Made by a program: the position numbers and the translations under genes
In this document: positions 12,651-53,500 of the stretch, piece after piece
How positions within the stretch are numbered: position 1 is the stretch's first letter
Layout of the letters: each line of letters opens with the position of its first letter
Notes under the pieces: generated by a model
Seen by the model: the letters and a program-made list of their open reading frames with translations, nothing else
What the model was told of the DNA's origin: nothing
Databases searched by the model: none
Source: Malacoraja senta
Lineage: Eukaryota
Assembly (NCBI GenBank): GCA_038087875.1
Contig: CM075978.1
Location: 140,492,001-140,556,000 of the forward strand
Direction of reading: 5' to 3'
Length of the DNA stretch: 64,000 nt

Positions 12651-13098
12651 AGGGGAGGGGACCAAATGCTTGGTCAAAGATGCAATGCGAGGAGGAGTGA
12701 GGTAAAAGAGTTGCAGGGGTATTGGTGGACGTTTATACTTTAGATACTTGACAACTTGAAGGCAAGTGACCAATGATAGAAGCAATTAATACAGGGCTGC
12801 CAACGCTCACGCTTTGAGCGCGAGTCACGCATTTCAGCCAATTCACATGGTGATGACAGAATTCTCACGCAGTCTTCATTCCCTACACAGTTTGTCTCTG
12901 CGCCACATGACAGCGATCTGTGCGGTTTGGGGAAGTGCGTCGGTTGACGGCTGTGAGTGACGTCGCATCTCTTCTCTTCTCTCTTGGTCAGATGTGCAGC
13001 CGCCGACAACATGAAGCAGCCGGAGATGGAACTAACTAGGTGAATCGGTTGTAAAACATGGAGTGGGGGGGGACCACAATGAGGCCAAACATCTAGGA

Positions 13099-13275
13099 CA
13101 GGGTTCGGCAACCTACGGCACACGGGCCGAATCCGGCCCGTAACCCGAAAAACCATGAGGTTTTTTTCAATTCGTTTTCGCGGGGTCGGGCAGGCGAGCC
13201 GACCTGGGAACTGCAGCAAGTCCCTGGTACGCGAGCTGATCTGGGAACGGCAGCCAGTCCCGGGGCACGCAGAAT
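13099..13275. mobile_element. hAT-Charlie-type left end with GC-rich interior (right end not found)
   Basis: cagggttcggcaacctacggcacacgggccgaatccggcccg is the same family as the end at 28894. Preceded by an NTCTAG-type target, atctagga. Confidence 0.65.
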
Positions 13276-13736
13276 GCCAACTTGATCAGTATGGACAAAT
13301 TGGGCCAGCCATGTACATGTTGTATAACTCTGACTCTCTGCAGATCTGAATGAGCTTAGAATTACCATTTAACAGGGCTCTCGTTTAACTTTTTTTCCCT
13401 GTTGCCAGCCGGGCAACCTCGGCAGCTTTTTAGGTTGCCAAATGACAGTTTAGGTGGTCATTTAAGATGGCTTGCATGATGCATGCGATAATGTGCTCGG
13501 ACGAATTGCGTAGTTACCAGTCGGAATTATGGTCAATGAAGCTTTCACATATTATTTCTGCTTCAAATAAAGTCACAAACTAAACGTATTCACCAATCAA
13601 GACATATATACCACAATGACATGCATCAAAATTACAAAACAGTATCTCATCTCTTTTTACACGTTGCAATGAATGCAATTTCTATTATCTCTTTCCACTT
13701 CCAAACAAAAATATGGTTATTCAGCGTATGATCAAC

Positions 13737-14148
13737 CTCGGTGAGACCAAGCGCAGGCTTGGCGATCGCTTCGCACAACACCTCCACTCAGTTCGCAATA
13801 ACCAACCTGATCTCCCGGTGGCTCAGCACTTCAACTCCCCCTCCCATTCCAAATCCGACCTTTCTGTCCTGGGCCTCCTCCATGGCCTGAGTGAGGCCCA
13901 CCGCAAATTGGAGGAACAGCACCTCATATTTTGCTTGGGTAGTCTACTTTCTTTCCTTTTGTTTTCTCCCTCCTTCCCCTCCCATTCCCAGCTCTCCCAC
14001 AGCCTCTCCGCCTCTTCCTTTCTTTTTCCCGCCCCCACCCCTCCCGACATCAGTCTGAAGAAGGGTCTCGACCCGAAACGTCGCCTATTTCCTTCGGTCC
14101 ATAGATGCTGCCTCACCTGCTGAGTTTCTCCAGCATTTTTGTCTACCC
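13737..14148 (+). mobile_element. Penelope-like element 3' fragment (GIY-YIG C-terminus plus terminal repeat)
   Basis: GETKRRLGDRFAQH...PVAQHFNS...RKLEEQHLIF.LG, followed by a hammerhead-like core at 14055-14082. Confidence 0.9.
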
Positions 14149-14373
14149 ATTCACACATGTTCTGTTATCCCACTTTCCTCACCCACTCCCTGCACATTAG
14201 GGGCAATTTTACAGAGACAAGTTAACCTACAAAGCCAATGCGCCTTTGGGATATGGGAGGAAACCCACATGCTTGCAGGGAGAATGTGCAAATTCAACAC
14301 AGACAGTGCCCGAGGACAGGATCGAACACAGATCTCTGGCGTGTGAGGCAGCAAGTCCACCAGCTGTGCCACT
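14149..14373 (-). mobile_element. HE1/V-SINE
   Basis: Reverse complement of the tRNA head and V-domain seen at 1916. Confidence 0.8.
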
Positions 14374-14524
14374 ACATTTTATTTTCCAACACACAAAAAA
14401 TTATACGTTGATAACTTTGGTTACTAAAAAAAAAGAAATTATCCATTTTCAGTCTTAAATCTCTAAGTGATGCTATGTCCCCCTTTACAGCTACTGTATG
14501 TTTTAATTCAGTTCAAGGCTATTG

Positions 14525-14830
14525 GGGCAGTACATTGGCCATAGATTTGCTGCCTAAAATTGCCAGAGACCCGGAATTGATCCTGAATATGGGTGCTGTC
14601 TGTATGGAGTTTTGTTTTCTCGTTTATAACATTGTTTACAGAGTACTATGTTTACATATTCTGTTGTGCTGCTGCAAGTAAGGATTTCATTGTTCTAACT
14701 GGGACGTGAGAGAATAAAACACTCTTGAGTTACGTCGCTGATGTGTGGGATAGAACTAGAGTACGGGTGATCGGTGGTCGGCATGGACTCGGTGGGCCGA
14801 AGGGCCTGTTTCCACGCTGTATCTTTAAAT
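14525..14830 (+). mobile_element. HE1/V-SINE interrupted by a Rex1-type 3' tail
   Basis: SINE head at 14525-14612, Rex1-like tail (ttctgttgtgctgctgcaagtaag...aataaa) at 14620-14730, SINE tail at 14740-14830. Confidence 0.65.
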
Positions 14831-16304
14831 TAAACTAAAAACACTAAAACCAGAGGAAATGTAAAGAAGGGTTTCTACCCGAAACGTCACCCAATTTTTT
14901 CTATCCAGAGATGTTGGCTGCTGCATGGAGTTCCCCCGCACAATTAAAGCATGGAATAGTCTTCACCCTACCATAGTTACCAACCAGACGCAACTAAATT
15001 TAAGGTCGCTTTTTTCCCCCCCAAGAACCCATTTTTGCTTAAGTCCAAGTCAAGAGTCAAGAGAGTTTTATTGTCATGTGTCCCAGATAGGGCAATGAAA
15101 TTCATGCTTGCTGCAGCACAACAGAATATGTAAACATAATACAGAACAGGAGGTAAAAGTTCAGTGTCTATATACTATAGACCATATATATACACAATAA
15201 ATAAACAGATAAAATGCAATAGGCTGTTATTTTTCAGAGTTTGGAGTTTGGTGGTGGTGGGTCCACCAATTTAAATTCCATTTCGAATATTTTTGGAGGA
15301 CCAGGAAACCAAGAAGCAAGAGTTACTCCAGGGAGTTACTGCAGCTCCAGGAAGTGATTCTGCATTGTTTTTCAGCAGTCACGGTGAGGCAGCGATCGGA
15401 CAGCAATGGCGGCCAGAACTCACACAATGCAAAGGGAGGGAGAAAGTGGCCGACGCCGACCACTTGCCGTGGCAGTGCGCATGTGCAGGGCTGCACTTGC
15501 CCACAACCACGGCCGATGATGTGCTCGGCGGCCGGCCGTGCCGAGCGGAGACCCGAGACCCGAGAGCAGAGCCGAGAGCTAGCGCCGAACGGAGAGCCGA
15601 GAGCTAGCACCGTGCGGAAAGCCGAGCGGAGAGCTAGCGGCGAGAGCGAGAGACGAGAGCTAGCGCCGAGCGCCGAGCCGAGACCCGGACAGCGGGCGGG
15701 TGTCCCGGTTGCTTGCCAAGGCGGGCAAAATGGCATGGCTTTAAGGTTGCTCGGCGGGACTGCAAGTTGCCATTGGCACCCGGGCAACCACTAATTTCGA
15801 GCCCTGTTTAAGCAAAATTGCCCCCACTTTCCCCATTTTGATTCTTGAGATTAATATCCCTTTGCTCTGTTAACAGTGTTAAAGTACATATGAGGTAGAG
15901 TCAGGAAAGGGAACATGTTATTTTTTTTAAAGTTTGCTTTAATTTGTTAGTTGAATGTTAGTTGACTGCCAACATTTCTGAAATAGTCTTAAATTAACAA
16001 CTGTTATATAGCAGTAATAAGTGATTTTAGTCCAAACAATTGGAACTTGCATAAAATGTTTGCATTATTAGCAGGGCTGCCAACTCTCACGCATTGAACG
16101 TGAGACTCACGCATTTCACAAAATTCACATGCTCTCACGCTGATCACAAATTTCTCACGCTCAAAAATATGCAGGTGCTGGAAGTTCAAAATAAAGCAAA
16201 AATTGTTTTAGAGGTGAGTAAAAACCATGAGTGGAATATAAGGTGAATGCATAGTCTTTTCCCCGGGATATGTGATTCAAGAACTAGAGGGCATTGGTTT
16301 AAAG

Positions 16305-16792
16305 CAGGGCTGTCAAACTACCGTCCCGCGGGATGATTTTGGGGGGAAAAAAAGTAGTTTAGTTTCTCCCGTGCAGATGGTGTGATAGGTGAGACACGGC
16401 GGTGGTCCCAGCACCGACCCCCCTCCCCCCCGAGGCACCGCTCACATCTCCCACCCTCACCTCCGGCGGCTCTGTGTCCGTCAGCCGCTCTGTCCACACC
16501 CCATGGAGTTTTAACCCCGGCCCGGAGCCAGGAGCGGACCAGGTGAGTGGGGGCGTCGGTGCCGCCTCCGGAGCCACGGGGATGAATCTCGGGCTAAGGC
16601 TCTGCTCCAATGCCCGACCCCCAGGTCACTGACCCTCACTTCCCCCGGACCCCAGCTGGACACAGAGCACCTGGGCCGGCCCGCATTCCCAGGGGGGGGG
16701 GAAGCGGGAAACGCTCCCCGGCCATCGCCAATCCTCCGCTCACTCCGGATGTTGTCGCCGCTTCACTGACACACACTATCACACACACACAC
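16305..16792. mobile_element. hAT-Charlie-like left end with CpG-rich cargo, splitting a CR1 3' fragment
   Basis: Starts cagggctgtcaaactaccgtcccgcggg. GC-rich from 16370 to 16770. CR1 sequence on both sides (16215-16304, 16795-16900). gtttaaag occurs on both flanks. Right TIR absent. Confidence 0.55.
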
Positions 16793-17959
16793 AAGGTTTA
16801 AAGGGATATGGGCCAAATGCAGATAAATGGGACTAGTTTAGATGGGGCATCATGATCTGCATGGACAAGTTGGGATGAAGGGGCTGTTTCCATGCTGTAA
16901 TGACACATTGTAGAAAGGGTGCAATTGCTCTGGAGAGGATCCAGGGACGATTTATGAAGATGTTATAATCTGATTTCCATACATGGTCCCTGTGTCATTC
17001 CTGTGCTGCACCTGTTGATCAGAGCCTGGCTCTACTGTGGAATGTAATTAGGAATGTAATTTAGCCTAACCTTATTCATACATAATCCAATTTAAAGCAT
17101 AAATGTTGCATTCAAGGGAAAGTTAAGACTCGCTACAGTATGCACCAGATTGCACAATTTCAAGCTGAAAAATGCAAAGCTCCCCCCTCCCACACCCTCC
17201 CCCTCTCGGTCACTACACTCCCTCGCAATTTCTCACTCTCAACCAAAATGTTGGCAGCCCTGAATTAATATCAGGGATGGTCAAAAGCCCAGATTTAGAG
17301 AAAGACAGTTATTTAAGGGGGGTGTCAGGTTGGTCACATTCCAGAGATGGAGAGTGGCCTAATCAGAAATATCCTTCCCAAGTGCTGCTGTAATGCTCTC
17401 CCCAATTAGCCGTGGAACACCCTCTCCCATTTTGTTCTCTTATCTGTCATAAATGAAACTCCTATACCCTTGAGCAGCCAGTCTTGCCCTTCCCAGAACC
17501 ACCTTCCATGATTGCAATAATAGCATAATCCCATCTGCTGATCCGCACTTTCAGCTCACCCATTTTACATGAGGTGCCTCACATTAAAATGAATGCAATT
17601 AACTATGAACTGTAGAGATTCAAAGGCCTCTTTCTGTGCTATAACAATCGTATTAACACAAGTAATCAATTTCAAATCGAATAAGGATTCTCAAATCATG
17701 TTATGCTCTCGAGGCACAAAGTGTTGGAGTAACTCAGTGGGCCAGGCACCATCTCTTTTTACGGGTCCCAACCCAAAAGGTCACCTATCCACGTTCTCCT
17801 GAGATGCTGCCTGACTCACTGAGCTACTCCAGCAATTGAGTCTTTTTTTGTAAACCAGCATTTGCAGTTCCTTGTTCTAGGGATACTGAACCAACTGTGG
17901 GCAGATTATTTAGTACAGTACTTCAGGACAGCTGGTACATGGGATGTCATTTAGCTTGG

Positions 17960-22703: not shown

Positions 22704-24141
22704 AGAAACATAGAAAATAGGTGCAGGAGTAGGCCATTCGGCCCTTCGAGCCTGCACCGCCATTCAAAATGATCATAGCAGATCATCCAACTCAGTATCC
22801 TGTACCTGCCTTCTCTCCATACCCCCTGATCCCTTTAGCCACAAGGGCCACATCTAACTCCCTCTTAAATATAGCCAATGAACTGGCCTCAACTACCTTC
22901 TGTGGCAGGGAATTCCACAGATTCACCACTCTCTGTGTGAAAAATGATTTTCTCATCTCGGTCCTAAAAGACTTCCCCCTTATCCTTAAACTGTGACCCC
23001 TTGTTCTGGACTTCCCCAACATCGGGAACAATCTTCCTGCATCTAGCCTGTCCAACCCCTTAAGAATCTTGTAAGTTTCTATAAGATCCCCCCTCAATCT
23101 TCTAAATTCTAGGGAGTACAAGCCGAGTCTATCCAGTCTTTCTTCATATGAAAGTCCTGCCATCCCAGGAATCAGTCTGGTGAACCTTCTCTGTACTCCC
23201 TCTATGGCAAGAATGTCTTTCCTCAGATTTGGTGACCAAAACTGTACGCAATACTCCAGGTGTGGCCTCACCAAGACCCTGTACAACTGCAGTAGAACCT
23301 CCCTGCTCTTATACTCAAATCCTTTTGCTATGAATACTAACATACCATTCGCTTTCTTCACTGCCTGCTGCACCTGCATGCCTACTTTCAATGACTGGTG
23401 TACCATGACACCCAGATCTCGTTGCATCTCCCCTTTTCCTAATCGGCCACCATTCAGATAATAGTCTACTTTCCTGTTTTTGCCACCAAAGTGGATAACC
23501 TCACATTTATCCACAGTATACTGCATCTGCCATGCATTTGCCCACTCACCCAACCTATCCAAGTCACCTTGCAGCCTCCTAGCATCCTCCTCACAGCTAA
23601 CGCTGCCCCCCAGCTTCGTGTCATCTGCAAACTTGGAGATGTTGCATTCAATTCCCTCATCCATTTCATTAATATATATTGTAAATAGCTGGGGTCCTAG
23701 CACTGAGCCTTGCGGTATCCCACTAGTCACTGCCTGCCATTCTGAAAAGGACCCGTTTACTCCTACTCTTTGCTTCCTGTCTGCCAGCCAGTTCTCTATC
23801 CACATCAATACTGAACCCCCAATACCGTGTGTTTTAAGTTTGTATACTAATCTCTTATGTGGGACCTTGTCGAAAGCCTTCTGAAAGTCCAGATATAACA
23901 CATCCACTGGTTCTCCCTTATCCACTCTACTAGTTACATCCTCGAAAAATTCTATAAGATTTGTCAGACATGATTTACCTTTCATAAATCCATGCTGACT
24001 TTGTCCAATGATTTCACCACTTTCCAAATGTGCTGCTATCCCATCTTTAATAACTGACTCTAGCATTTTCCCCACTACCGATGTTAGACTAACTGGTCTG
24101 TAATTCCCCATTTTCTCTCTCCCTCCCTTTTTAAAAAGTGG
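22704..24141 (-). mobile_element. Young 5'-truncated CR1 LINE inserted into the 3' UTR of an opposite-strand CR1
   Basis: The host CR1 gagtggcttgat|gggccgaatagactaattctgc is split at 22703/24140. (tttctatg)-type tail. Confidence 0.92.
22792..24111 (-). CDS. CR1 ORF2 reverse transcriptase, uninterrupted C-terminal 439 aa (5'-truncated, no native start)
   Basis: NYRPVSLTS, QHGF, LDFQKAFD, GIPQGSVLGP, FADD, RDLGV and HLEYC motifs in one open frame. Confidence 0.9.
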   Translation of the reverse strand: MGNYRPVSLTSVVGKMLESVIKDGIAAHLESGEIIGQSQHGFMKGKSCLTNLIEFFEDVTSRVDKGEPVDVLYLDFQKAFDKVPHKRLVYKLKTHGIGGSVLMWIENWLADRKQRVGVNGSFSEWQAVTSGIPQGSVLGPQLFTIYINEMDEGIECNISKFADDTKLGGSVSCEEDARRLQGDLDRLGEWANAWQMQYTVDKCEVIHFGGKNRKVDYYLNGGRLGKGEMQRDLGVMVHQSLKVGMQVQQAVKKANGMLVFIAKGFEYKSREVLLQLYRVLVRPHLEYCVQFWSPNLRKDILAIEGVQRRFTRLIPGMAGLSYEERLDRLGLYSLEFRRLRGDLIETYKILKGLDRLDAGRLFPMLGKSRTRGHSLRIRGKSFRTEMRKSFFTQRVVNLWNSLPQKVVEASSLAIFKRELDVALVAKGIRGYGEKAGTGY

Positions 24142-25497: not shown

Positions 25498-26506
25498 CAC
25501 CACCCACCTCTCCCCAACTGTAAACTACATTTGAAGGTCTACTCCCAATATCCCTGAGAGCCTACCTGCAGCTGGTTGTACTATGTTACAGCACCAGTAC
25601 CCCCGGTTAAATCCTGGCTTTCGGTGCTGTCTATGTAATCTGTATCTGCACATGGAGAGGTGTGATTTCTTCGAGGTACGCCAGTTTTATCTCGAATCTC
25701 AAAGATATGCAGCTTGGTAGGTTAAATATCCACTGAAAACCATATGGAGTATCTTGAGTCAAGTGTTTTATTGTCATATTTCCCAAAATGGAACAATGAA
25801 ATTCTTACTAAAATCAGAAGGATATTGATGGGAATGTGGGGGGGATGAAATGGGATTGGTTATCACTGAAAGTAGGTATTTTATAGTCATTGCAAACTGT
25901 TTGCCGAAAGGCCTGCTTCAGAACAGGGTGATGCTATGAATGTGACATAAGGGTATCTATCTGGGCTTTTCAAAGAACAACAGGTGGAATAAAACTGGTA
26001 CTCATCTTAGAACAATTAAAGCTTTACAAGTTTGTCACAGGAAAACTACATTGGACAAAAAAGTTAACCGGTCTCTATGAGCACAGGCATGGTTAAAAGC
26101 AACTCTAATCGTCACCTCAAAGTTCTGTACAGTACAAAGGTTGCTCTGAAGCGATGACTGCTACGTTTGCATAAGACTTAGGATCCAGCAAAATTAAACC
26201 ATCTAAGAGCACCGAACTGGAAAAAATGAAACTACAGCTCCAGACTTGCAATCTAATGGTATTTTCACTATTCCCTGTACAATGCAAAAGAATGCATTAC
26301 TCAGACGTTTCCCTTGAATTTGCATGCACGCTTATTCAAGATCATTTAAAAAAAGATAAACTATGTGCAGGAAAAATGTAATCATCATTTTTTTAATCTA
26401 ATTACTTACTGTGACGAAAGCCTTCAATAGCATGATTGAACACAAACCATACGTTGGCTTTGACATAAAAATATCTTAAGACCAATATTAATGATTGGGA
26501 AACAAC

Positions 26507-27000
26507 AGGTAGACACAAAATGCTGGAGTAACTCAGCAGGACAGGCAGCATCTCTGGAGAGAAGGAATGGGTTTTGGGGCGAGACCCTTCTTCAGACTGA
26601 TGTCAGGGGAGTGGGCGGGCAGAGATAGAATATAGTCAGAGACAGTAAGACTGGTGGGAGAACTGGGAAGGGGGAGGGCATGGAGAGAGTGGGAAAGCAA
26701 GGGCTATTTGGAGTTAGAGAAGTCAATGTTCATAACGTTGGGGTGTAAGCTACCCAAGCGAAATATGAGGTGCTGTTCCTCCAATTTGCTCTGGGCTTCA
26801 ATCTGACAATGGAGGAGGCCGAAGACAGAAAGGTCAGATTAGGAATGGTTTGGGGAGTTAAAGTGCTGAGCAACCGGGAGATCAGGTAGGTTAAGGCGGA
26901 CTGAGCAGAGGTGTTCAGTGAAACGATCGCCGAGCCTGCGCTTGGTCTCGCCAATATACAGGAGATGACACCGGGAACAGCGGATACAGTAGATGAGCTT
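26507..27000 (-). mobile_element. Penelope-like element fragment with GIY-YIG endonuclease
   Basis: LIYCIRCSRC.LLYIGETKRRLGDRF.EH, plus terminal repeat. Confidence 0.9.
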
Positions 27001-28893
27001 CTGGCCGGGATTCTGTGGGCACAATTGCCTTATTCACATGCCGCTGCTCATGTGTGAGCTGTAACAGTCAATGATTACAGGCGATATAACTATCAAGGGG
27101 ATTACAAGCAGACATTATCTTCTCACCAAATGGCTTACACATGCAGTTACTGCCAGGTTCAGTGGGGAGCCATCAAGAGATGCCCAAGCCACTATTTTTC
27201 CTCCCCAAATACAAATGGCAACCAGAGCATTTTGACACCACTCAGTCATTCGGTTCAAATTGTTTCTACTTAATGTGGATGGCAACATAATAATTACTTG
27301 TGTATCAGATTCTAGCAACGGATGAAGGAAAATGGAAACAGCAACAAGCTTTTGTTTAAGGCTATAACATGTTTAATTTCATATATCTTAAGGTAGACAC
27401 AAAATGCTGGAGTAACTCAGCGGGACAGGAAGCATCTCTGGAGAGAAGGAATGGGTGACGTTTCGGGTCGAGACCATTCTTCAGATATCTTAAACTGGCT
27501 TAATTCTTTGAGATATTTTTGAACCGAGGGAACACTGCAATAGTTAGATTAGTACAAGTCGTTGAGAAAACAATCTTCATTCATGACATGTGGTAAAAAG
27601 GACAACTGATCAATCTCACAGTGAGAGGAGACAACAGGCATCTGACGTTGGAATTGTGAGCAAAAATTAAAATGTTCAAGATACTCAGTGAGTCAGGCAG
27701 CACCTGTGGGGGGAAATGGACAGATGTTTTGGGTTGGGACCCTTCTTCAGACTGGGTCTAAAAATGGAAAGCCTGATTTAAGTAAATTGGGGTATAATAT
27801 TTTTTGCTGGTCAGTGAACAACTGAAGGACATACATTTAAGTTGTTTTTTCACAAAACACGATAGATCTCAGCTTCCATTCACCTGCTGCAACACAAGCT
27901 TGGATGGGTCAGACTCCATAAATAGCTTCCAGAAATGGAGAAGCATGCGGAACAGGATGAGGAATTCGACTCCGTTCATTCTTTCAGTCAAGACAGGTGC
28001 TTTGGGCTGCTTGGTTGTCTTCCAAGATGCAAGATTTAATTAGAATTAACAAGTTCTGAAACGTTCCATGATTGCATCGAGGTAAACAGACCATCTTACT
28101 CGTCACATCGTCCTATTTGCACAGAACAATGAAATGCAACCATCCTATCAATGCTTGGTTTTAAACATGCTGTATATTGTATCACATTTAAAACTGAAAT
28201 GTACGTGATAACGTGTAATTTCATAGAACCAGGTCAGGTGACAGTATATAAGAAAACTTTGAACAACTCAAAAGTAAGAAGAAGATCAGTGTTTATGAGT
28301 TGATTGAATTTATAACACGGTACATACCAAACAGCTCCTGGATGGATAGTTGTCATTGTTAAGAGTAGTTTATCTGCTGCATTTTGACAAAAAAGCTCTT
28401 GTTACCTTATCCCAACCACAATATTAACTTAATTTAAAGCCAATGTGCCTGGCAACAATTCGAAACAATGTTGCACAGAAGTATCCTAACTAACTGTATT
28501 TTAGGACACAGAAGTATCCTAACTAACTAACTGTTGAAAGCCTTCGATAAATACAAAATATCCCAGAGAAAGGGCATATCATACAGTGCCCTCCATAATG
28601 TTTGGGACAAAGACACATCATTTATTTATTTGCTTCTGTACTCCACAATTTGAGATTTGTAATAGAAAAAATCACATGTGGTTAAAGTGCACATTGGCTG
28701 ATTTTATTATAGGGGATTTTTATACATTTTGGTTTCACCATGTAGAAATTACAGCAGTGTGTTTATACATAAGTGCCCTCATTTCAGGGCACGATAATGT
28801 TTGGGACACATGGCTTCACAGGTGTTTGTAATTGCTCAGGTGTGTTTAATTGCCTCCTTCATGCAGGTATAAGAGAGCTCTCGGCATCTAGTC

Positions 28894-29445
28894 CAGGGGT
28901 CGGCAAACTACGGCCCACGGGCCGGATGCGGCCCATAACCCAATATCACCCGGCCTGCTGGTGTATTATTTTTAGTCCGATGCGGTACTGCCGTCGCTGG
29001 AAGACGTCATTGTTGAGGGTGGGGGAGTCCCAGCTGTGATGTGTTTCCCGCAGGTAGATCTGTGGGCAGGAGGGTGCCTCGGGCAGGCTGTCCCGGGACA
29101 AGGAGCCTGTGCTGCAGTTGATGGCCTCGTTGGAGTTGAGCGTGCTGTCTGGGCTCTCGTTGTCCCCATCAGACAGCTCGGCCTCCGCTTTGCCATTGCG
29201 ACTGACCTCTCCAAGGGGGTCCAGGCGGGGGGGCAGGTGGGGCGAGGTGGGGATCTGGTGGACAGGGACGGGGAAGGGAGGCATGGGGGGTTGGGTCTCT
29301 GCCTCGTAGCCCAGGCCAGCTGCCGGCCCAGCGAGCCACGCTCAGACTGGTCGCTCATGTCCACCGAGCTGTCACTGGGTGGCTCGATGGTGAGCAGTGG
29401 CAGGTGGGCGGTGCGACGCCGGCATAACAAGCTTTCAGACCCCTG
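28894..29445. mobile_element. Pack-type hAT-Charlie non-autonomous element carrying a host gene fragment
   Basis: TIRs CAGGGGTCGGCAAACT and CAGGGGTCTGAAAGCT (reverse complement), 13/16 identical. 8-bp TSD atctagtc / acctaatc. Removing it restores the Tc1 5' UTR seen in the full-length copy. Confidence 0.88.
28974..29423 (-). pseudogene. IQSEC2: Captured coding fragment of an IQSEC/BRAG ARF-GEF gene (IQSEC2-like), region just upstream of the Sec7 domain
   Basis: [25 protein letters not shown], then a frameshift near 29315, then [30 protein letters not shown]...[28 protein letters not shown]. These match recalled IQSEC1/2 motifs ([50 protein letters not shown]). The family call is firm; the paralog call is less so. 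Confidence 0.85.
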
Positions 29446-30510
29446 ACCTAATCTTTCCTCCAGTCTTTCCATCACCTTTGGAAACTTTTATTGGTGTTTA
29501 TCAACAAAGATGTGCCAATGAAGTCAAAGAAGCCATTATGAGACTGAGAAACAAGAATAAAACTTTTAAAGAGCTCGAAAGGCAGAGTGTAGACATGAGA
29601 TAAACCATGATTTAAAGTAAAATAAGAATCAGTGAAGGAGGGCTGCAATGGAAAAAATGCTCTGTGCCTCCCTTATCAGTGTAGTTATTTCCTTACACAA
29701 GGAACGGAACATTGACTGAACTGGTGAGGCACAGTGACCAAACACAAGATCCTGAACTATGCGCTGTGCAAACTGGCTTGGAACATAGACAGCTGAACCT
29801 ATACACAACCAACAGCTGTTTTATGCCCATGAACTGTAAATTTACAGTGCACAAACATTTACAGCCTTCAGACAACAGGCCCATTTCATGCTGAATTTAC
29901 GGTAATTTTAAACATACAAACTAACAGAAACACTGATTTTGAACCAAACAGTAAAATTACTAAAGATGGACTGCAACACTATAAAAAATAATGTCATAAC
30001 TGCTTGTATCCAAGTGTCAGCATTAAGTAGTCTGAGATGCCAGTATCATACACTTCCTGCTCAGCATCAGTAGTAGCTTCATCTTCAACATCACAATAAA
30101 CTGAGACGGTATGAATATAACATTATCCATGAAAACCAGCCAACATAAAATTAAAGGGAGCTTTGTGCTGCAAGATTCCACTCACGAGAAACCGTACCCA
30201 AGCCTTTTGCTATAAGAGAGAAAATAGTCTTTGCCATCAAATTCAATTGTCTTTGAGCACAAATCTCAAAAATAGATCAATGTATATAATGTTTCAGTGA
30301 CCTTTAGGATTTTTTCAACACAGATTTTCAATCAGACTTTCTCAGCCAAATAACAAAACCTTTGATCAAATACTCCATGAACTTTGACAAGCACCAACAC
30401 CCATCAAGCAATTTATTAGCTTATGAAGCACACTACTGCAGCCACCATATATAAAAAGCCATGCAGTTTACTGGAAGGCTTCAAGTTTGGAAGTCTCTAA
30501 AAGAAACAAT

Positions 30511-30947
30511 GGCCTGGTGGGAGACCGCTTTTCAGAGCTCCCGCAACGGCAACTTCTCCCGCCCAAATTGCGGGGTTGAAAACGACCTGGAGCGGGGCCT
30601 TACATCGCCCAGCGCGGCTTAAACGGCCGCGGGACTTGCCATCGCCCACCGGGGGGTCCAACATCAAGACCCGGCGCAGGGCCTTACATCGCCCGGCGCG
30701 GCCTTAACGGCCGCGGGACTTGCCATCGCCCGCCGGGGCTTTAACATCGGGAGAAGAATGGAAAACAGGGGAGAATACAACGACTTTGCCTTCCATCAGT
30801 GAGGAGATTCACCGTGATGGATGTTTGTGTAAATTGTGTTAATTGTGTGTCTTGTTTTTTTTTTCCTTTCTTGTTGTATGACTGCAGAAACCAAATTTCG
30901 TTTGAACTTCATTTGAGGTTCAAATGACAATAAACGGTATTGTATTG
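30511..30947 (+). mobile_element. 5'-truncated copy of the GC-rich non-autonomous retroelement at 49221-50070
   Basis: Shares ggtgggagaccgctttt..gctcccgcaacggca and the tail aaatttcgtttgaac..ttcaaatgacaataaa. Internal duplication of about 80 bp. Confidence 0.65.
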
Positions 30948-31781
30948 TTAAAGTTAGCAAATTCACCTGCAGGGCACATGGATCGTAGAGCGAAAACAAA
31001 GCAGGGATGAATGGTAACTTGCATGTTACCAGTGGCAATGAATATATACAGACAGGAGAGGATATATTAGACAGCACAATTTTTGACAAGTTAGAGATGA
31101 AAAAGTCTAAGCCAGTAAAGACACTGCTCAAACAATCAAATCAGAGATTGTGAAGGGATGGATAAAGATCTCAAGATTGAGGAAGGGAGGAGCAGGAAAT
31201 TGGACGAAGCTCATTTTGGGTTGAACATGATTTATAACGCTATAAACTGACTAATTTTCCCTGAGAATGTAGATTGGAAAGTGCTTGAAATCAGGGCAAC
31301 GCAGTCCACGGCAGACACCAAATTTGTTTTGAGTCATCTCAATAATGAGTCAGAGGAACTAAGATGGATCTTTCAGAATAATTACATGTTTACCTTGTAT
31401 TTGGAATAAATGCAGGCCAGATGGAATTTAAAATGTCTCCATTAATTCTGCAACACAAGTACGAAGTAATTCTTAACTGCAACAAAGCTTCAAGGCTAAG
31501 ACCACAGGACTAACGAATCTGCCAAGTTGAGTATAGGGTGCACCTTGAACCACCATTTGGATTTTGAATATACATGAACAATAATAGATGTCATTTCTAA
31601 GCATGCAAAGACTTAAGCAACCTCATACTCATGTAAAGTGTAAGCTTGGCTATTAACGTGCAGCATTCATGGCCATGTTTGTAGAGTTTCATTACAATCT
31701 TAAAAAAATGATTGAAACCAAAACAAATAATATTACAGTTCTTTATGCAATTATTTAGACTTTATTAGACCATAAGTCATA

Positions 31782-33427
31782 CAGTGCCCTCCATAATGTT
31801 TGGGACAAAGACCCATCATTTATTTATTTGCCTCTGTACTACACAATTTGAGATTTGTAATAGAAAAAAATCACATGGTTTAAATGCACATTGTCAGATT
31901 TTAATAAAGGCCATTTTTATACACTTTGGTTTCACCATGTAGAAATTGCAGCAGTGTTTATACATAGTTCCCCCCCCATTTCAGGGCTCCATAATGTTTG
32001 GGACACAGCAATGTCTTGTAAATGAAAGTAGTCATATTTAGTATTTTGTTGCATATCCTTTGCATGCAATGACTGCTTGAAGTCTGCGATTCATGGACAT
32101 CAGCAGTTGCTTGGTGTCTTCTCTGGTGATGCCTCTGCCAAGCCTGTATTGCAACCATCTTTAGCTTATGCTTGTTTTGGGGGCTAGTCTCCTTCAGTTT
32201 TCTCTTCAGCATATAAAAGGCATGCTCAATTGGGTTCAGATCGGATGATTGACGTGGCCACTCAAGAATTTACCACTTTTTCGTTTTGAAAAACTCCTCC
32301 GTTGCTTTAGCAGTATGTTTGGGATCATTGTCTTGCTGTAGAATGAACTGCCGGCCAATGAGTTTTGAGGCATCTGTTTGAACTTGAGCAGATAAGATGT
32401 GTCTATACACGTCAGAATTCATTATGCTACTACCATCAGCAGCTGTATCATCAATGAAGATAAGTGAGCCAGTACCTTCAGCAGCCATACATGCCCAGCC
32501 AACCCCCACCACCGTGTTTCACAGATGGGGTGGTATGCTTTGGAACTTGGGCAGTTCCTTCCCTCCTCCATACTTTGCTCTTGCCGTCACTCTGATATAA
32601 GTTAATCTTCGTCTCATCTGTCCACAAGATAATTTTCCAGAACTGTGGTTGCTCTTTTAAGTACTTCTTGGCAAATTGTAACCTGGTCATCCTATTTTTA
32701 TGGCTAACCAGTGGTTTGCATCTTGCAGTGTAGCCTCTGTATTTCTGTTCATGAAGTCTTCTGCGGACAGTGGTCATTGACAAATCCACACCTGACTCTT
32801 GAAGAGTGTTTCTGATCTGTCGGACAGGTGTTTGGGGATTTTTCTTTATTATTGAGAGAATTCTTCTGTCATCAGCTGTGGAGGTCTTCCTTGGCCTGCC
32901 AGTCCCTTTGCGATTAGTAAGCTCACCAGTGCTCTCTTTCTTCTTAATGATGTTCCAAACAATTGATTTTGGTAAGCCTAAAGTTTGGCTGGTGTCTCTA
33001 ACAGTTTTATTCTTGTTTTTCAGTCTCATAATGGTTTCCTTGACTTTCATTGGCACAACTCTGGTCCTCATGTTGATAAACACCAATAAAATGTTTCAAA
33101 GGTGATGGAAAGACTGAAGGAGACTGGGTGCTGAGAGCTCTCTTATACCTGCATTAAGGAGGCATTTAAACACACCTGAGCAATTACAAACACCTGTGAA
33201 GCCATGTGTCCCAAACATTATGGTGCTCTGAAATGGGGGGACTATGTATAAACACAGCTGTCATTTCTACATGGTGAAACCAAAATGTATAAAAATTGCC
33301 TTTAAATAAATCTGACAATGTGCACTTTAACTACGTGATTTTTTTCTATTACAACTCTCAAATTGTGGAGTACAGAGGCAAATAAATAAATGATGGGTCT
33401 TTGTCCCAAACATTATGGAGGGCACAG
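31782..33427 (-). mobile_element. Full-length Tc1 transposon, IR/DR type (1646 bp)
   Basis: TA TSD. TIRs of about 220 bp starting CAGTGCCCTCCATAATGTTTGGGACA, with an inner direct repeat ctccataatgtttgggaca at about 31988. Confidence 0.95.
32038..33071 (-). pseudogene. Tc1 DD34E transposase, inactivated
   Basis: GRPRK, WTDETK, KHGGG, QQDNDPKH and SDLNPIE motifs (34 residues between the second D and E), ending KGYATKY*. Frameshift near 32510, in-frame stop at 32270, second frameshift near 32130. Confidence 0.92.
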
Positions 33428-50509: not shown

Positions 50510-53500
50510 GTAGTCATAGTCATAGAGTAATACAGTGTGGAAACAGGCCCTTCGGCCTAACTCGCCCACCGGCCAACAATGTCCATCTACCCTAGTCCCA
50601 CTTGCCTGCGCTTGGTCCATAACCCTCCAAACCTGTCCTGTCAATGTACCTGTCCAACTGTTTCTTAAATAATGGGATAGTCTCAGCCTCAACTACCTCC
50701 TCTGGCACCTTGTTCCATACATCCACCACCCTGTGTGAAAAAGTTACCCCTAGGATTCCTATTAAATCTTTTCCCCTTCACCTTGAACCTATGTCCCTCT
50801 GGTCCTCGATTCCCCTGCTCTGGTAAAAGACTATGTGCATCTACCCGATCTATTCCTCTCATGATTTTGTATACCTCTATAAGATCTCCCCTCATCCTCC
50901 TATGCTCCATGGAATAGAGACCCAGCCTACTCAACCTCTCCCTATAGCTCACACCCTCTAGTCCTGGCAACATCCTCATAAATCTTTTCTGAACCCTTTC
51001 AAGCTTGACAATATCTTTCCTATAACATGGTGCCCAGAACTGAACACAATATTCTAAATTCGGTCTCACCAACGTCTTATACAACTACAACATGACCACC
51101 CACCTTCCATACGCAATACTCTGACTGATGAAGGCCAAAGTGCCAAAAGCCTTTTTGACCACCTTATCTACCTGCGACTCGACCTTCATGGAACCATGCA
51201 CCTGTACTCCTAGATCCCTCTGCTCTACAACACTACCCAGAGGCCTACCATTTAATAACCATATAACCATATAACAATTACAGCACGGAAACAGGCCATC
51301 TCGGCCCTTCTAGTCCGTGCCGAACACTTACTCTCACCTAGTCCCATCTACCTGCACTCAGACCATACCCTCCATTCCTTTCCCGTCCATATGCCTAACC
51401 AATTTATTTTTAAATGATAAAATCGAACCTGCCTCCACCACTTCCACTGGAAGCTCATTCTACACAGCTACCACTCTCTGAGTAAAGAAGTTCCCCCTCA
51501 TGTTACCCCTAAACTTTTGTCCCTTAATTCTCAAATCATGTCCTCTTGTTTGAATCTTCCCTACTCCCAATGGAAAAAGCTTATCCACGTCAACTCTGTC
51601 TATCCCTCTCATAATTTTAAAGACCTCTATCAAGTCCCCCCTTAACCTTCTGTGCTCCAAAGAATAAAGACCCATCTTGTTCAACCTGTCTGCTGAAACC
51701 CAGGCAACATTCCAGTAAATTTCCTCTGTACTCTCTCTATTTTGTTGACATCTTTCTTATAATTTTGGCGACCAGAATTGTACACCATATTCCAGAATTG
51801 GCCTCACCAATGCCTTGTACAATTTTAACATTACATCCCAACTTCTATGCTCAATGCTCTGATTTATAAAGGCCAGCACACCAAAAACTTTCTTTACCAC
51901 CCTATCTACATGAGATTCCACCTTCAGGGAACTATGCACAGTTATTCCTAGATCCCTCTGTTCTACTGCATTCCTCAATTCGCTACCATTTACCATGTAT
52001 GTCCTATTTTGATTTGTCCTACCAAGATGTAGCACACTTATCAGAATTAAGCTCCATCTGCCATCTTTCAGCCCACTCTCCCAAATGACCTAAATCTCTC
52101 TGTAGACTTTGAAAATCGACTTCATTATCCACAACACCAATTATCTTAGTATCATCTGCATACTTACCAATCCAATTTACCACACCATCATCCAGATCAT
52201 TGATGTATATGACAAACAACAATGGACCCAACACAGATCCCTGAGGCACCCCACTAGTCACCGGCCTCCAACCTGACAAACAGCCATCCACCATTACTCT
52301 CTGGTATCTCCCATTCAGCCACTGTTGAATCCATCTTGCTACTCCACTATTAATACCCAACAATTGAACCTTCTTAACCAACCTTCCATGTGGAACCTTG
52401 TCAAAGGCCTTACTGAAGTCCATATAGACAACATCCACCGCTTTACCCTCATCAATTTCCCCAGTAACCTCTTCAAAAAATTCAAGAAGATTAGTCAAAC
52501 ATGACCTTCCAGGCACAAATCCATGTTGACTGTTCCTAATCAGACCCTGTTTATCCAGATGATTATATATATTATCTCTAAGTATCCTTTCCATTAATTT
52601 GCCCACCACTGACGTCAAACTAACAGGTCTATAATTGCTAGGTTTACTCTTAGAACCCTTTTTAAACAATGGAACATGCGCACTAGGCCAATCCTCCGGC
52701 ACCATTCCCGTTTTTCAGTTCCACCCAAATAGCCTCCCTAGACGAGCCCTCTAATCTATCCTGCCAAAGCACTGCTGTAATACCTTCCCTGACAAGCAAT
52801 GCAACACCTCCACCTCTTGCCCCTCCAATTCTATCACACCTGAAGCAAGGAAATCCTGGAATATTTAGTTTCCAATCACAGCCATCCTGCAACCATGTTT
52901 CACTAATCGCCACAACATCATACTTCCAGGTGTCAATCCAGGCTCTAAGCTCATCCACCATTCTTACAATGCTCCTAGCATTAAAATATACACATTTAAG
53001 AAACCCACCACCTCTTATTCTCTGTTTATTATCTTCTTCTTCTTTCTCCCCTACATGTTGGATCTGAGTGCTTCCCTTCTCTGCCTCCTGCCTCACACAC
53101 TGTCTACTAGCTTTCTCTATTTGAGTCCCTTCCCCCAACCATTCTAGTTTAAAGTCTCCCCAATAGCCTTTGCAAATCTCCCCGCCAGGATATTGGTTCC
53201 CCTCGGGTTCAAGTGCAACCCGTCCTTTTTGTGCAGGTCACACCTTCCCCAAAAGAGGTCCCAATGATCCAGAAACTTGAATCTCTGCCCTCTGCACCAG
53301 TCCCTCAGCCACGCATTTATCCTCCACCTCACTCCATTCCTACTCTCACTGTCGCGTGGCACAGGCAGTAATCCTGAGATTGTTACCTTTGCGGTTTCTC
53401 CTTAACTCTCTTCCTAACTCCCTAAATTCTCCTTTCAGGACCTCTTCCCTTTTTCTACCTATGTCATTGGTACCTATATGTACCACGACCTCTGGCTCCT

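What the first reader, a model, noticed from the sequence alone, without database searches (positions are those of the whole stretch)
28894..29445. Pack-hAT carrying an IQSEC2-like ARF-GEF exon fragment
Seen: a TIR- and TSD-bounded 552-bp hAT in which only about 80 bp (left) and 22 bp (right) are transposon ends. The other ~450 bp translate on the minus strand, with one frameshift, to IQSEC/BRAG sequence that stops abruptly at YRIGL just before Sec7. It sits cleanly inside a Tc1 relic, so ends and cargo most likely arrived together. Known: DNA-transposon capture of host exons is common in plants (Pack-MULEs) and much rarer in animals. Inference: a gene-fragment-mobilising hAT family in a cartilaginous fish. 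The cargo seems to lie within one large exon, which fits DNA-level gap-repair capture. Multiple copies could yield IQSEC antisense or small RNAs, or chimeric exons.
Basis: partly seen in the sequence, partly recalled or inferred. Interest (0 to 1): 0.85.

Follow-up and report, generated by a model that had tools for sequence, protein, structure and literature searches.

The report
Skate hAT transposon carrying IQSEC2 exon fragment
A 552-base non-autonomous hAT transposon in a skate genome carries about 450 bases copied from the middle of one exon of the host gene IQSEC2; it belongs to a family of roughly 10-30 copies found in at least three related species, but this copy is old, broken and shows no sign of function.

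Summary
Window 28894-29445 is a 552-bp element with hAT-type ends (CAGGG..., 13/16 inverted repeat). It is flanked by an 8-bp target duplication (ATCTAGTC / ACCTAATC) and sits inside a Tc1 relic. Other Tc1 copies, including one in this window at 32995-33254, carry a single 8-mer at that point and lack exactly 560 bp, so this is a true insertion.

Only 80 bp on the left and 21-24 bp on the right are transposon. The 448 bp between them read on the minus strand as IQSEC2, from RRRTAHLPLL to YRIGL. The closest proteins are shark IQSEC2-like. The fragment lies inside one large exon and ends five codons before the splice donor.

Contigs from public runs show the cargo is multicopy: about 15-30x single-copy depth and at least 10 variants in the source species, and 4-13x in two relatives. 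The same hAT/cargo left junction recurs in these copies, and one copy has a different flank. No other copy shares this copy's right junction. The single frameshift is a 5-nt insertion private to this copy, and its other private changes are largely CpG decay.

This is a new, unusually amplified member of the known animal Pack-TIR (Pack-hAT) class. I found no evidence of expression. The scan had noted other Pack-type elements in this genome, but not this cargo.

The parts
28582..28893 (+). Left part of the host Tc1 relic (5' inverted-repeat and UTR region)
   Evidence: Contig depth jumps from about 5 to 1e5-1e6 at 28582 in four runs. It aligns at 87% to the paralogous Tc1 at 32995-33254.
28886..28893 (.). 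Left copy of the 8-bp target-site duplication, ATCTAGTC
   Evidence: Tc1 contigs lacking the element skip exactly 560 bp.
28894..28973 (+). hAT left end, 80 bp (terminal inverted repeat 28894-28909)
   Evidence: Depth reaches about 57,000 against 26.6 for single copy in the source species. Cargo-free family contigs diverge exactly after 28973 (loose ends). The first 48 bp recur at window 13099-13146.
28974..29421 (-). Cargo: IQSEC2-like coding fragment, RRRTAHLPLL...YRIGL, all from one parental exon. The boundary may lie up to 3 nt further right.
   Evidence: Exon limits come from Danionella locus L001. Multicopy depth is shown.
29315..29319 (-). 5-nt extra GCCTG that causes the only frameshift; private to this copy
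   Evidence: The frame switches at RQL|GYEAE. Most other copies lack 5 nt here: 225 of 326 depth in X2 and 55 of 98 in X4 (table 4).
29422..29445 (+). hAT right end, 21-24 bp (terminal inverted repeat 29430-29445)
   Evidence: A relative's IQSEC mRNA contig stops matching at 29422. Depth here is 1x in the source species, so other copies do not share this junction.
29446..29453 (.). Right copy of the target-site duplication, ACCTAATC
29454..29580 (+). Right part of the host Tc1 relic (UTR and start of the transposase reading frame), truncated near 29580
   Evidence: Depth profile; alignment to the paralog
32995..33254 (-). Paralogous Tc1 copy that shows the uninterrupted (empty) target site
   Evidence: blastn covers query 1-253 across the junction at 87%. 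It has a single ACCCAGTC. The adjacent ORF has the Tc3-type HTH transposase domain.
13099..13146 (+). Second left end of the same hAT family, without this cargo

Best explanation
This is an old, decayed member of a multicopy Pack-hAT family. A non-autonomous hAT element of a very abundant CAGGGGTC-ended family picked up about 450 bp from inside one large exon of the host's IQSEC2(-like) gene. The capture was at the DNA level and happened once, most plausibly by template switching during repair of an excision gap or a stalled fork (inferred). The chimera was then mobilised in trans by a hAT transposase and reached roughly 10-30 copies before the three sampled skate species diverged (copy number and shared junction shown; transposition of the other copies largely inferred). 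The copy in this window inserted into the 5' region of a Tc1 element and made an 8-bp duplication (shown). It keeps only about 24 bp of right end. Either it descends from an internally deleted derivative, or it suffered the deletion soon after insertion (inferred). It has since drifted neutrally, gaining a private 5-nt frameshifting insertion and CpG-to-TpG decay that replaces residues invariant in real IQSEC2 (shown). The fragment encodes only the disordered linker before the Sec7 domain, contains no Pfam domain, and shows no sign of expression, so it is most likely inert.
For: Insertion: TIRs, an 8-bp TSD and exact 560-bp empty sites in paralogous Tc1 copies.

Cargo identity: phmmer and BLAST to IQSEC2. 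The best matches are shark IQSEC2-like proteins, at 88% over the first 34 aa and 73% over the last 73 aa. Shark-specific residues are shared (NCSTGS, SPxLNND, VPVPVH).

Single exon: Danionella exon residues 368-713 end at NLFNK, and gene-model read-throughs run on after NLFNK.

Multicopy: summed contig depth across the cargo is 400-900 against 26.6 for single copy in organism A. There are 9-14 distinct contigs per site. Depth is 4-13x in organisms B and C.

Shared junction: contigs span the left end, the 28973|28974 junction and the cargo in A, B and C. X4 record 24 stops exactly at 28894 and runs 200 nt into an unlike flank.

Orthology: a single-copy contig in organism C covers cargo, right end and Tc1 flank, and both unique flanks are present there at about 90-95%.

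Decay: 17 listed sites where the family majority differs from this copy. Nine are CpG transitions. Seven of the 8 nonsynonymous ones restore residues seen in real IQSEC2: R in ETRHSWD, T in KQTY, S in GSSSRD, T in NETINC, L in SLNS, R in SDRS and A in GEASRNGK. The frameshift is private (table 4).
Against: Copy number rests on summed assembler word depth of short contigs at 80% likeness, which the tool warns is not a true copy count. No other copy was read end to end, so their right ends, TSDs and loci are unknown. Only one contig shows a different flank. Only 24 bp of right end remain, which may be too little for efficient transposition, and this exact right junction is single-copy. The 8-bp target does not fit the weak hAT nTnnnnAn preference at position 7.
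Confidence: 0.8

Rival explanations
1. Single-copy capture in place. A plain hAT relic already sat in this Tc1, and a later double-strand break inside it was filled with IQSEC2 sequence without any transposition. This is the commonest origin of animal Pack-TIRs in Tan et al. 2021.
For: Most animal Pack-TIRs are single-copy gap fills (PMC8277862). This copy's right junction is single-copy.
Against: The cargo is 15-30x in depth. The identical 28973|28974 junction recurs in other contigs in three species, and one of them has a different flank.
Confidence: 0.04
2. The extra cargo copies arose by segmental or tandem duplication of a region that contains a hAT end joined to an IQSEC2 fragment, not by transposition. 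Only this copy happens to be TIR/TSD-bounded.
For: TSDs of other copies were not read. Other copies diverge from this one near 29409-29421 into unknown sequence.
Against: Tc1 flanks and the right end are not co-amplified with the cargo: depth is 1x at 29422-29457. Copies differ by 3-12% and by several indels, as a dispersed old family would. X4 record 24 breaks exactly at the terminal base 28894, as a transposon boundary would.
Confidence: 0.08
3. The fragment is functional, either as an exonised or expressed IQSEC2-derived peptide or as a source of antisense or small RNA that regulates IQSEC2.
For: The family ancestor had an open frame through the cargo: most copies lack the 5-nt insertion. 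Eight of the 17 listed private changes are nonsynonymous, fewer than a naive neutral expectation. Some animal Pack-TIRs are transcribed (PMC8277862).
Against: This copy is frameshifted and altered at residues invariant in IQSEC2. It has no Pfam domain, no splice-site context, and lies in a TE-rich region inside a Tc1 relic. No RNA run held more than 0.05 of the cargo words. The only RNA contig on the cargo continues into upstream IQSEC coding sequence, so it is the real gene. The excess of synonymous changes is explained by CpG sites at third codon positions.
Confidence: 0.05

Closest known systems
Multicopy Pack-hAT-N8_XT of Xenopus tropicalis (291 bp of CAPSL 5' UTR, three copies with distinct TSDs; Tan et al. 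2021, PMC8277862)
   Same: A non-autonomous hAT with short retained ends and a host-gene fragment of a few hundred bp as its interior. It is amplified after capture, and the copies lie away from the parent.
   Different: Here the cargo is coding sequence, an in-frame piece of one exon. The inferred copy number is several-fold higher (about 10-30 against 3-5). The family is old and shared by at least three species. The host is a cartilaginous fish, and I found no paper describing Pack-type elements in skates.
Single-copy animal Pack-TIRs made by transposition-independent gap filling (Tan et al. 2021)
   Same: TIR-transposon ends flank non-TE filler of similar size (median 224 bp), and hAT is the commonest carrier (208 of 370).
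   Different: Those are single-copy, usually lie within 15 kb of the parent, and have an orthologous cargo-free TE. This one is multicopy and was inserted as a unit with a TSD.
Pack-MULEs, Pack-CACTA and other Pack-TYPE elements of plants
   Same: Capture of gene fragments between transposon ends and their amplification. The fragments are mostly non-functional.
   Different: A different superfamily (hAT, 8-bp TSD) and a vertebrate host. It carries a single fragment rather than the multi-gene chimeras common in rice.
Pack-Harbinger with an IGSF10 fragment in the same skate genome (earlier scan note s1-174990)
   Same: Same genome and the same phenomenon: a DNA transposon carries a neutrally drifting host coding fragment.
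   Different: A different superfamily and cargo. That note was not re-tested here.

Membership tests
hAT superfamily, non-autonomous element | 8-bp target-site duplication | tested here: met
   ATCTAGTC / ACCTAATC (6/8). Paralogous Tc1 copies carry one 8-mer and lack exactly 552 + 8 bp.
hAT superfamily, non-autonomous element | Short terminal inverted repeats beginning YARNG | tested here: met
   Both ends begin CAGGG, with a 13/16 inverted repeat. That YARNG is the hAT rule comes from general knowledge, not from a tool.
hAT superfamily, non-autonomous element | Target preference nTnnnnAn | tested here: not met
   The inferred target ACCTAGTC has C at position 2 and T at position 7. This is only a weak statistical preference, not a requirement.
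hAT superfamily, non-autonomous element | A cognate autonomous element encoding a hAT transposase with the same ends | not tested
   None is present in the window, and the genome could not be searched.
Pack-TIR / Pack-TYPE element | Transposon ends on both sides of an internal non-TE sequence | tested here: met
   80-bp left end and about 24-bp right end around 448 bp of non-TE sequence.
Pack-TIR / Pack-TYPE element | Interior homologous to a host gene | tested here: met
   IQSEC2, E = 3e-21; the closest relatives are shark IQSEC2-like proteins.
Pack-TIR / Pack-TYPE element | Parental copy identified in the same genome | not testable with these tools
   The source genome cannot be searched. 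Only a relative's IQSEC mRNA contig (about 90% identical over 107 nt) was seen. Shark loci returned no DNA.
Pack-TIR / Pack-TYPE element (multicopy, transposition-dependent class) | Several copies with the same cargo junctions at different loci, each with its own TSD | tested here: inconclusive
   Multicopy depth and a shared left junction are shown in three species. One contig has a different flank starting at the terminal base. The TSDs and right junctions of other copies were not readable.
Functional IQSEC2 exon or gene | Open frame, splice sites, and continuation into the Sec7 and PH domains | tested here: not met
   The sequence is frameshifted. It ends 5 codons before the exon's donor and runs into transposon sequence. 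No Sec7 domain, and no other IQSEC-like sequence in the window.

The most novel reading that the evidence does not exclude
The family may be the most highly amplified exon-carrying Pack-TIR yet seen in an animal. It would be one of several cargo-carrying CAGGG-ended hAT lineages in skates, which would mean hAT-mediated exon shuffling was a recurrent process in this clade. Some members with the ancestral open frame may be transcribed, as chimeric exons or as antisense RNA to IQSEC2.
Probability: 0.1. Interest if true: 0.65.

Novelty: new member of a known kind. Interest (0 to 1): 0.42.

Why it matters
Capture and spread of gene fragments by DNA transposons is well documented in plants. In animals, one survey of 100 genomes found only four multicopy cases, each with a handful of copies. 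A coding-exon fragment carried by a hAT element, amplified to tens of copies and kept across several skate species, would extend the phenomenon to cartilaginous fishes. It would also give a good system for asking how such chimeras arise, because both cargo ends are mid-exon, which fits DNA-level template switching. It also has a practical side: these copies can be mis-annotated as IQSEC2-like gene fragments.

Tried and rejected
- A short-query protein search for ORFs from other copies found only one real-gene fragment, P0036.
- Two long-query searches found shark IQSEC2-like proteins but no skate or ray IQSEC2.
- Fetching shark IQSEC2 loci failed: no record, or the file was too large. Danionella L001 was used for exon structure instead.
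- Logan contigs L002-L004 (P0157) are not close to the cargo and were dropped.
- Two exact-pattern scans of metagenome contigs, one for the junction and one for a conserved cargo stretch, found nothing.
- The window holds no second cargo copy.
- Rfam found nothing in 26000-32000.
- The cargo has no Pfam domain.
- The right end of the 13099 element could not be found, so the family's canonical right end is unknown.
- The scan's own notes hold no IQSEC entry and no look-alike by sequence.
- Rejected: a real exon, chance TIRs, capture in place, and an assembly artefact. Two runs of the source species (X1 and X2, different samples) give zero-difference contigs over 28912-29014 (X1 only) and over 29120-29475 (X1) or 29120-29457 (X2), which include the right junction.

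Full report
**What is there**

Window 28894-29445 is a GC-rich island (61-69% GC against about 35% around it). It begins CAGGGGTCGGCAAACT and ends with the reverse complement of CAGGGGTCTGAAAGCT, a 13/16 inverted repeat. It is flanked by ATCTAGTC (28886-28893) and ACCTAATC (29446-29453).

The surrounding sequence is a truncated Tc1 element running from 28582 to about 29580. That Tc1 family is enormously abundant: summed contig depth is 1e5-1e6 in four public runs from four organisms.

**The element is an insertion**

Among those Tc1 contigs, many join 28885 or 28891 directly to 29446 or 29452. They skip exactly 560 bp, which is the 552-bp element plus one 8-bp repeat.

A paralogous Tc1 copy inside this same window (32995-33254, minus strand) aligns at 87% straight across the point and has a single ACCCAGTC there.

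So the element is a genuine insertion with an 8-bp target duplication, as hAT elements make. Each TSD copy is one transition away from an inferred ACCTAGTC.

**How much is transposon**

A second end of the same family lies at window 13099 and shares the first 48 bp.

When contigs were laid on the element alone at 80% likeness, the left end reached a depth of about 57,000 against 26.6 for the single-copy contig of this locus in the source species. That implies thousands of copies. Cargo-free members follow the element up to 28973 and then continue with the family's own interior (CAATTCGTTTTC..., as at window 13160-13180). The left transposon part is therefore exactly 80 bp.

On the right, a 408-nt RNA contig from a related organism matches 29316-29422 at about 90% and then continues upstream. 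On the minus strand it reads in frame ...SECRDY|RRRTAHLPLL, which is real IQSEC coding sequence. The cargo therefore ends at 29421-29424, and the right transposon part is 21-24 bp.

**Cargo identity**

On the minus strand, 29421 to about 29320 reads [34 protein letters not shown]. After a frame change, 29314-28973 reads LGYEAE...[21 protein letters not shown].

An exhaustive phmmer search gave 24 hits. The five full-length hits scanned against Pfam all have Sec7 and IQ_SEC7_PH domains, and the source names seen for them and their cluster members are IQSEC1 or IQSEC2. The best was bullfrog IQSEC2 at E = 3e-21, where the match ends at residue 552 and Pfam Sec7 starts at residue 545.

Among 253 IQSEC proteins collected, the four best matches to the cargo are the four shark IQSEC2-like proteins (Carcharodon, Mustelus, two Scyliorhinus). 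Identity is 88% over the first 34 aa, 73% over the last 73 aa, and 56-61% over the alignment that includes the variable proline-rich middle. The cargo shares shark-specific residues: NCSTGS, SPxLNND, the VPVPVH motif and SRNGKAE. A chondrichthyan host origin is therefore the natural reading.

The cargo carries no Pfam domain. It is the disordered linker before Sec7.

**Exon context**

In the Danionella IQSEC2 locus (L001), tblastn places residues 368-713 in one exon, which ends exactly at ...[10 protein letters not shown]. Several gene models from other vertebrates read through into junk right after NLFNK, which fits the same boundary.

The whole cargo therefore lies inside one large exon and stops five codons short of its donor. 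Its 5' end is also mid-coding. This fits capture of genomic DNA. It does not formally exclude cDNA, because no intron is spanned.

**Copy number and family**

At 80% likeness in the source species (X2, single copy = 26.6), summed depth across the cargo varies by segment:

| Segment | Summed depth | Multiple of single copy |
|---|---|---|
| 28982-29180 | 340-780 | 13-29x |
| 29222-29280 (variable middle) | 50-72 | 2-3x |
| 29302-29400 | 300-460 | 11-17x |
| 29422-29457 | 26.6 | 1x |

- In the variable middle, many contigs skip from about 29150-29228 to about 29316.
- Nine to fourteen distinct contigs carry alternative bases at single sites.
- Two other species show 4-13x.
- At 90% likeness only about 1-5x remains, so most copies differ from this one by 10% or more. 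The family is old.
- Contigs in all three species span the left end, the 28973|28974 junction and the cargo.
- One 348-nt contig in organism C stops exactly at the terminal base 28894 and continues for 200 nt into sequence unlike the Tc1 flank.

The capture therefore happened once and the chimera spread. Capture in place is refuted.

Two caveats apply. Summed assembler depth is not a true copy count. And I could not read any other copy end to end.

**The right junction is private**

No other copy continues from the cargo into this copy's 24-bp right end. Either the family's usual members have a longer right portion and this copy descends from, or became, an internal-deletion derivative, or the cargo extends further in the other copies.

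A single-copy-depth contig in organism C covers 29152-29457, including the right end and 12 nt of Tc1 flank. Both unique flanks of the locus are present in that species at about 90-95%. The insertion, with its short right end, is therefore probably orthologous and predates that split.

**Decay**

The frameshift is a 5-nt extra GCCTG between RQL and GYEAE. Most other copies lack those 5 nt: 225 of 326 depth in X2 and 55 of 98 in X4 (table 4). The family ancestor therefore read straight through.

At 17 well-supported sites the other copies (the majority in the source species or in both relatives) differ from this copy:
- Nine are CpG-to-TpG or CpA changes in this copy.
- Seven of the eight nonsynonymous ones restore residues found in real IQSEC2, several of them invariant: R in ETRHSWD, T in KQTY, S in GSSSRD, T in NETINC, L in SLNS, R in SDRS and A in GEASRNGK.

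This is what a methylated, unselected transposon copy looks like.

**Expression**

The search for runs holding the cargo found only DNA-type holders above 0.05 of its words. The one RNA contig on the cargo is the relative's real IQSEC mRNA. Rfam finds nothing nearby. The neighbourhood is TE-rich, with LINE reverse transcriptases and Tc1 copies. I see no support for the proposed RNA or chimeric-exon roles. RNA of the source species itself was not examined.

**Comparison with what is known**

Tan et al. 2021 (PMC8277862) catalogued 370 Pack-TIRs in 100 animal genomes, 208 of them on hAT elements. Nearly all were single-copy gap fills close to the parent. Only four were multicopy (three in Xenopus tropicalis and one in alligator). 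One example is Pack-hAT-N8_XT, which has a 291-bp CAPSL 5' UTR piece in three copies. About 13% carried exonic sequence.

The present element belongs to that rare multicopy class. It differs by carrying an in-frame coding fragment, by a several-fold higher apparent copy number, by its age and multi-species spread, and by its host clade.

Literature searches found no report of Pack-type elements in skates.

The scan's own notes mention a Pack-Harbinger with an IGSF10 fragment, and three CAGGG-ended hAT-like elements with GC-rich cargo elsewhere in this genome. These are untested leads. They suggest the phenomenon recurs in this genome, but none concerns this cargo.

**Verdict**

This is a new member, with a notably large family, of a known kind of element. 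This particular copy is an inert relic.

Noticed in passing
window 32478-33254 (-): A better-preserved paralogous Tc1 copy. It has a 202-aa ORF with the Tc3-type HTH transposase domain. I used it here as the empty-site reference.
   Followed up: partly
window 13099-13146 (+), inside 12792-17262: A second left end of the same CAGGGGTC hAT family, nested in a larger CAGGGCTGCCAAC...GTTGGCAGCCCTG element. No matching right end was found for it in the window.
   Followed up: partly
window 30584-30738: A GC-rich (about 64%) 84-bp unit repeated 1.8 times at 90% identity, in an otherwise AT-rich stretch. Its nature is unknown.
   Followed up: no
window 22792-24111 (-) and 52019-52705 (-): ORFs with reverse-transcriptase (RVT_1) domains, probably LINE relics. 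The window as a whole is TE-rich, and no host gene was detected among the large ORFs tested.
   Followed up: no
window 28582-28893 and 29446-29580: The host Tc1 family is extremely abundant (summed contig depth 1e5-1e6) and shared at 90% or more among at least four organisms, including an RNA run.
   Followed up: no
window 29150-29151: This copy has TG where most other copies have CA. Both states look like independent decay of an ancestral CpG.
   Followed up: no
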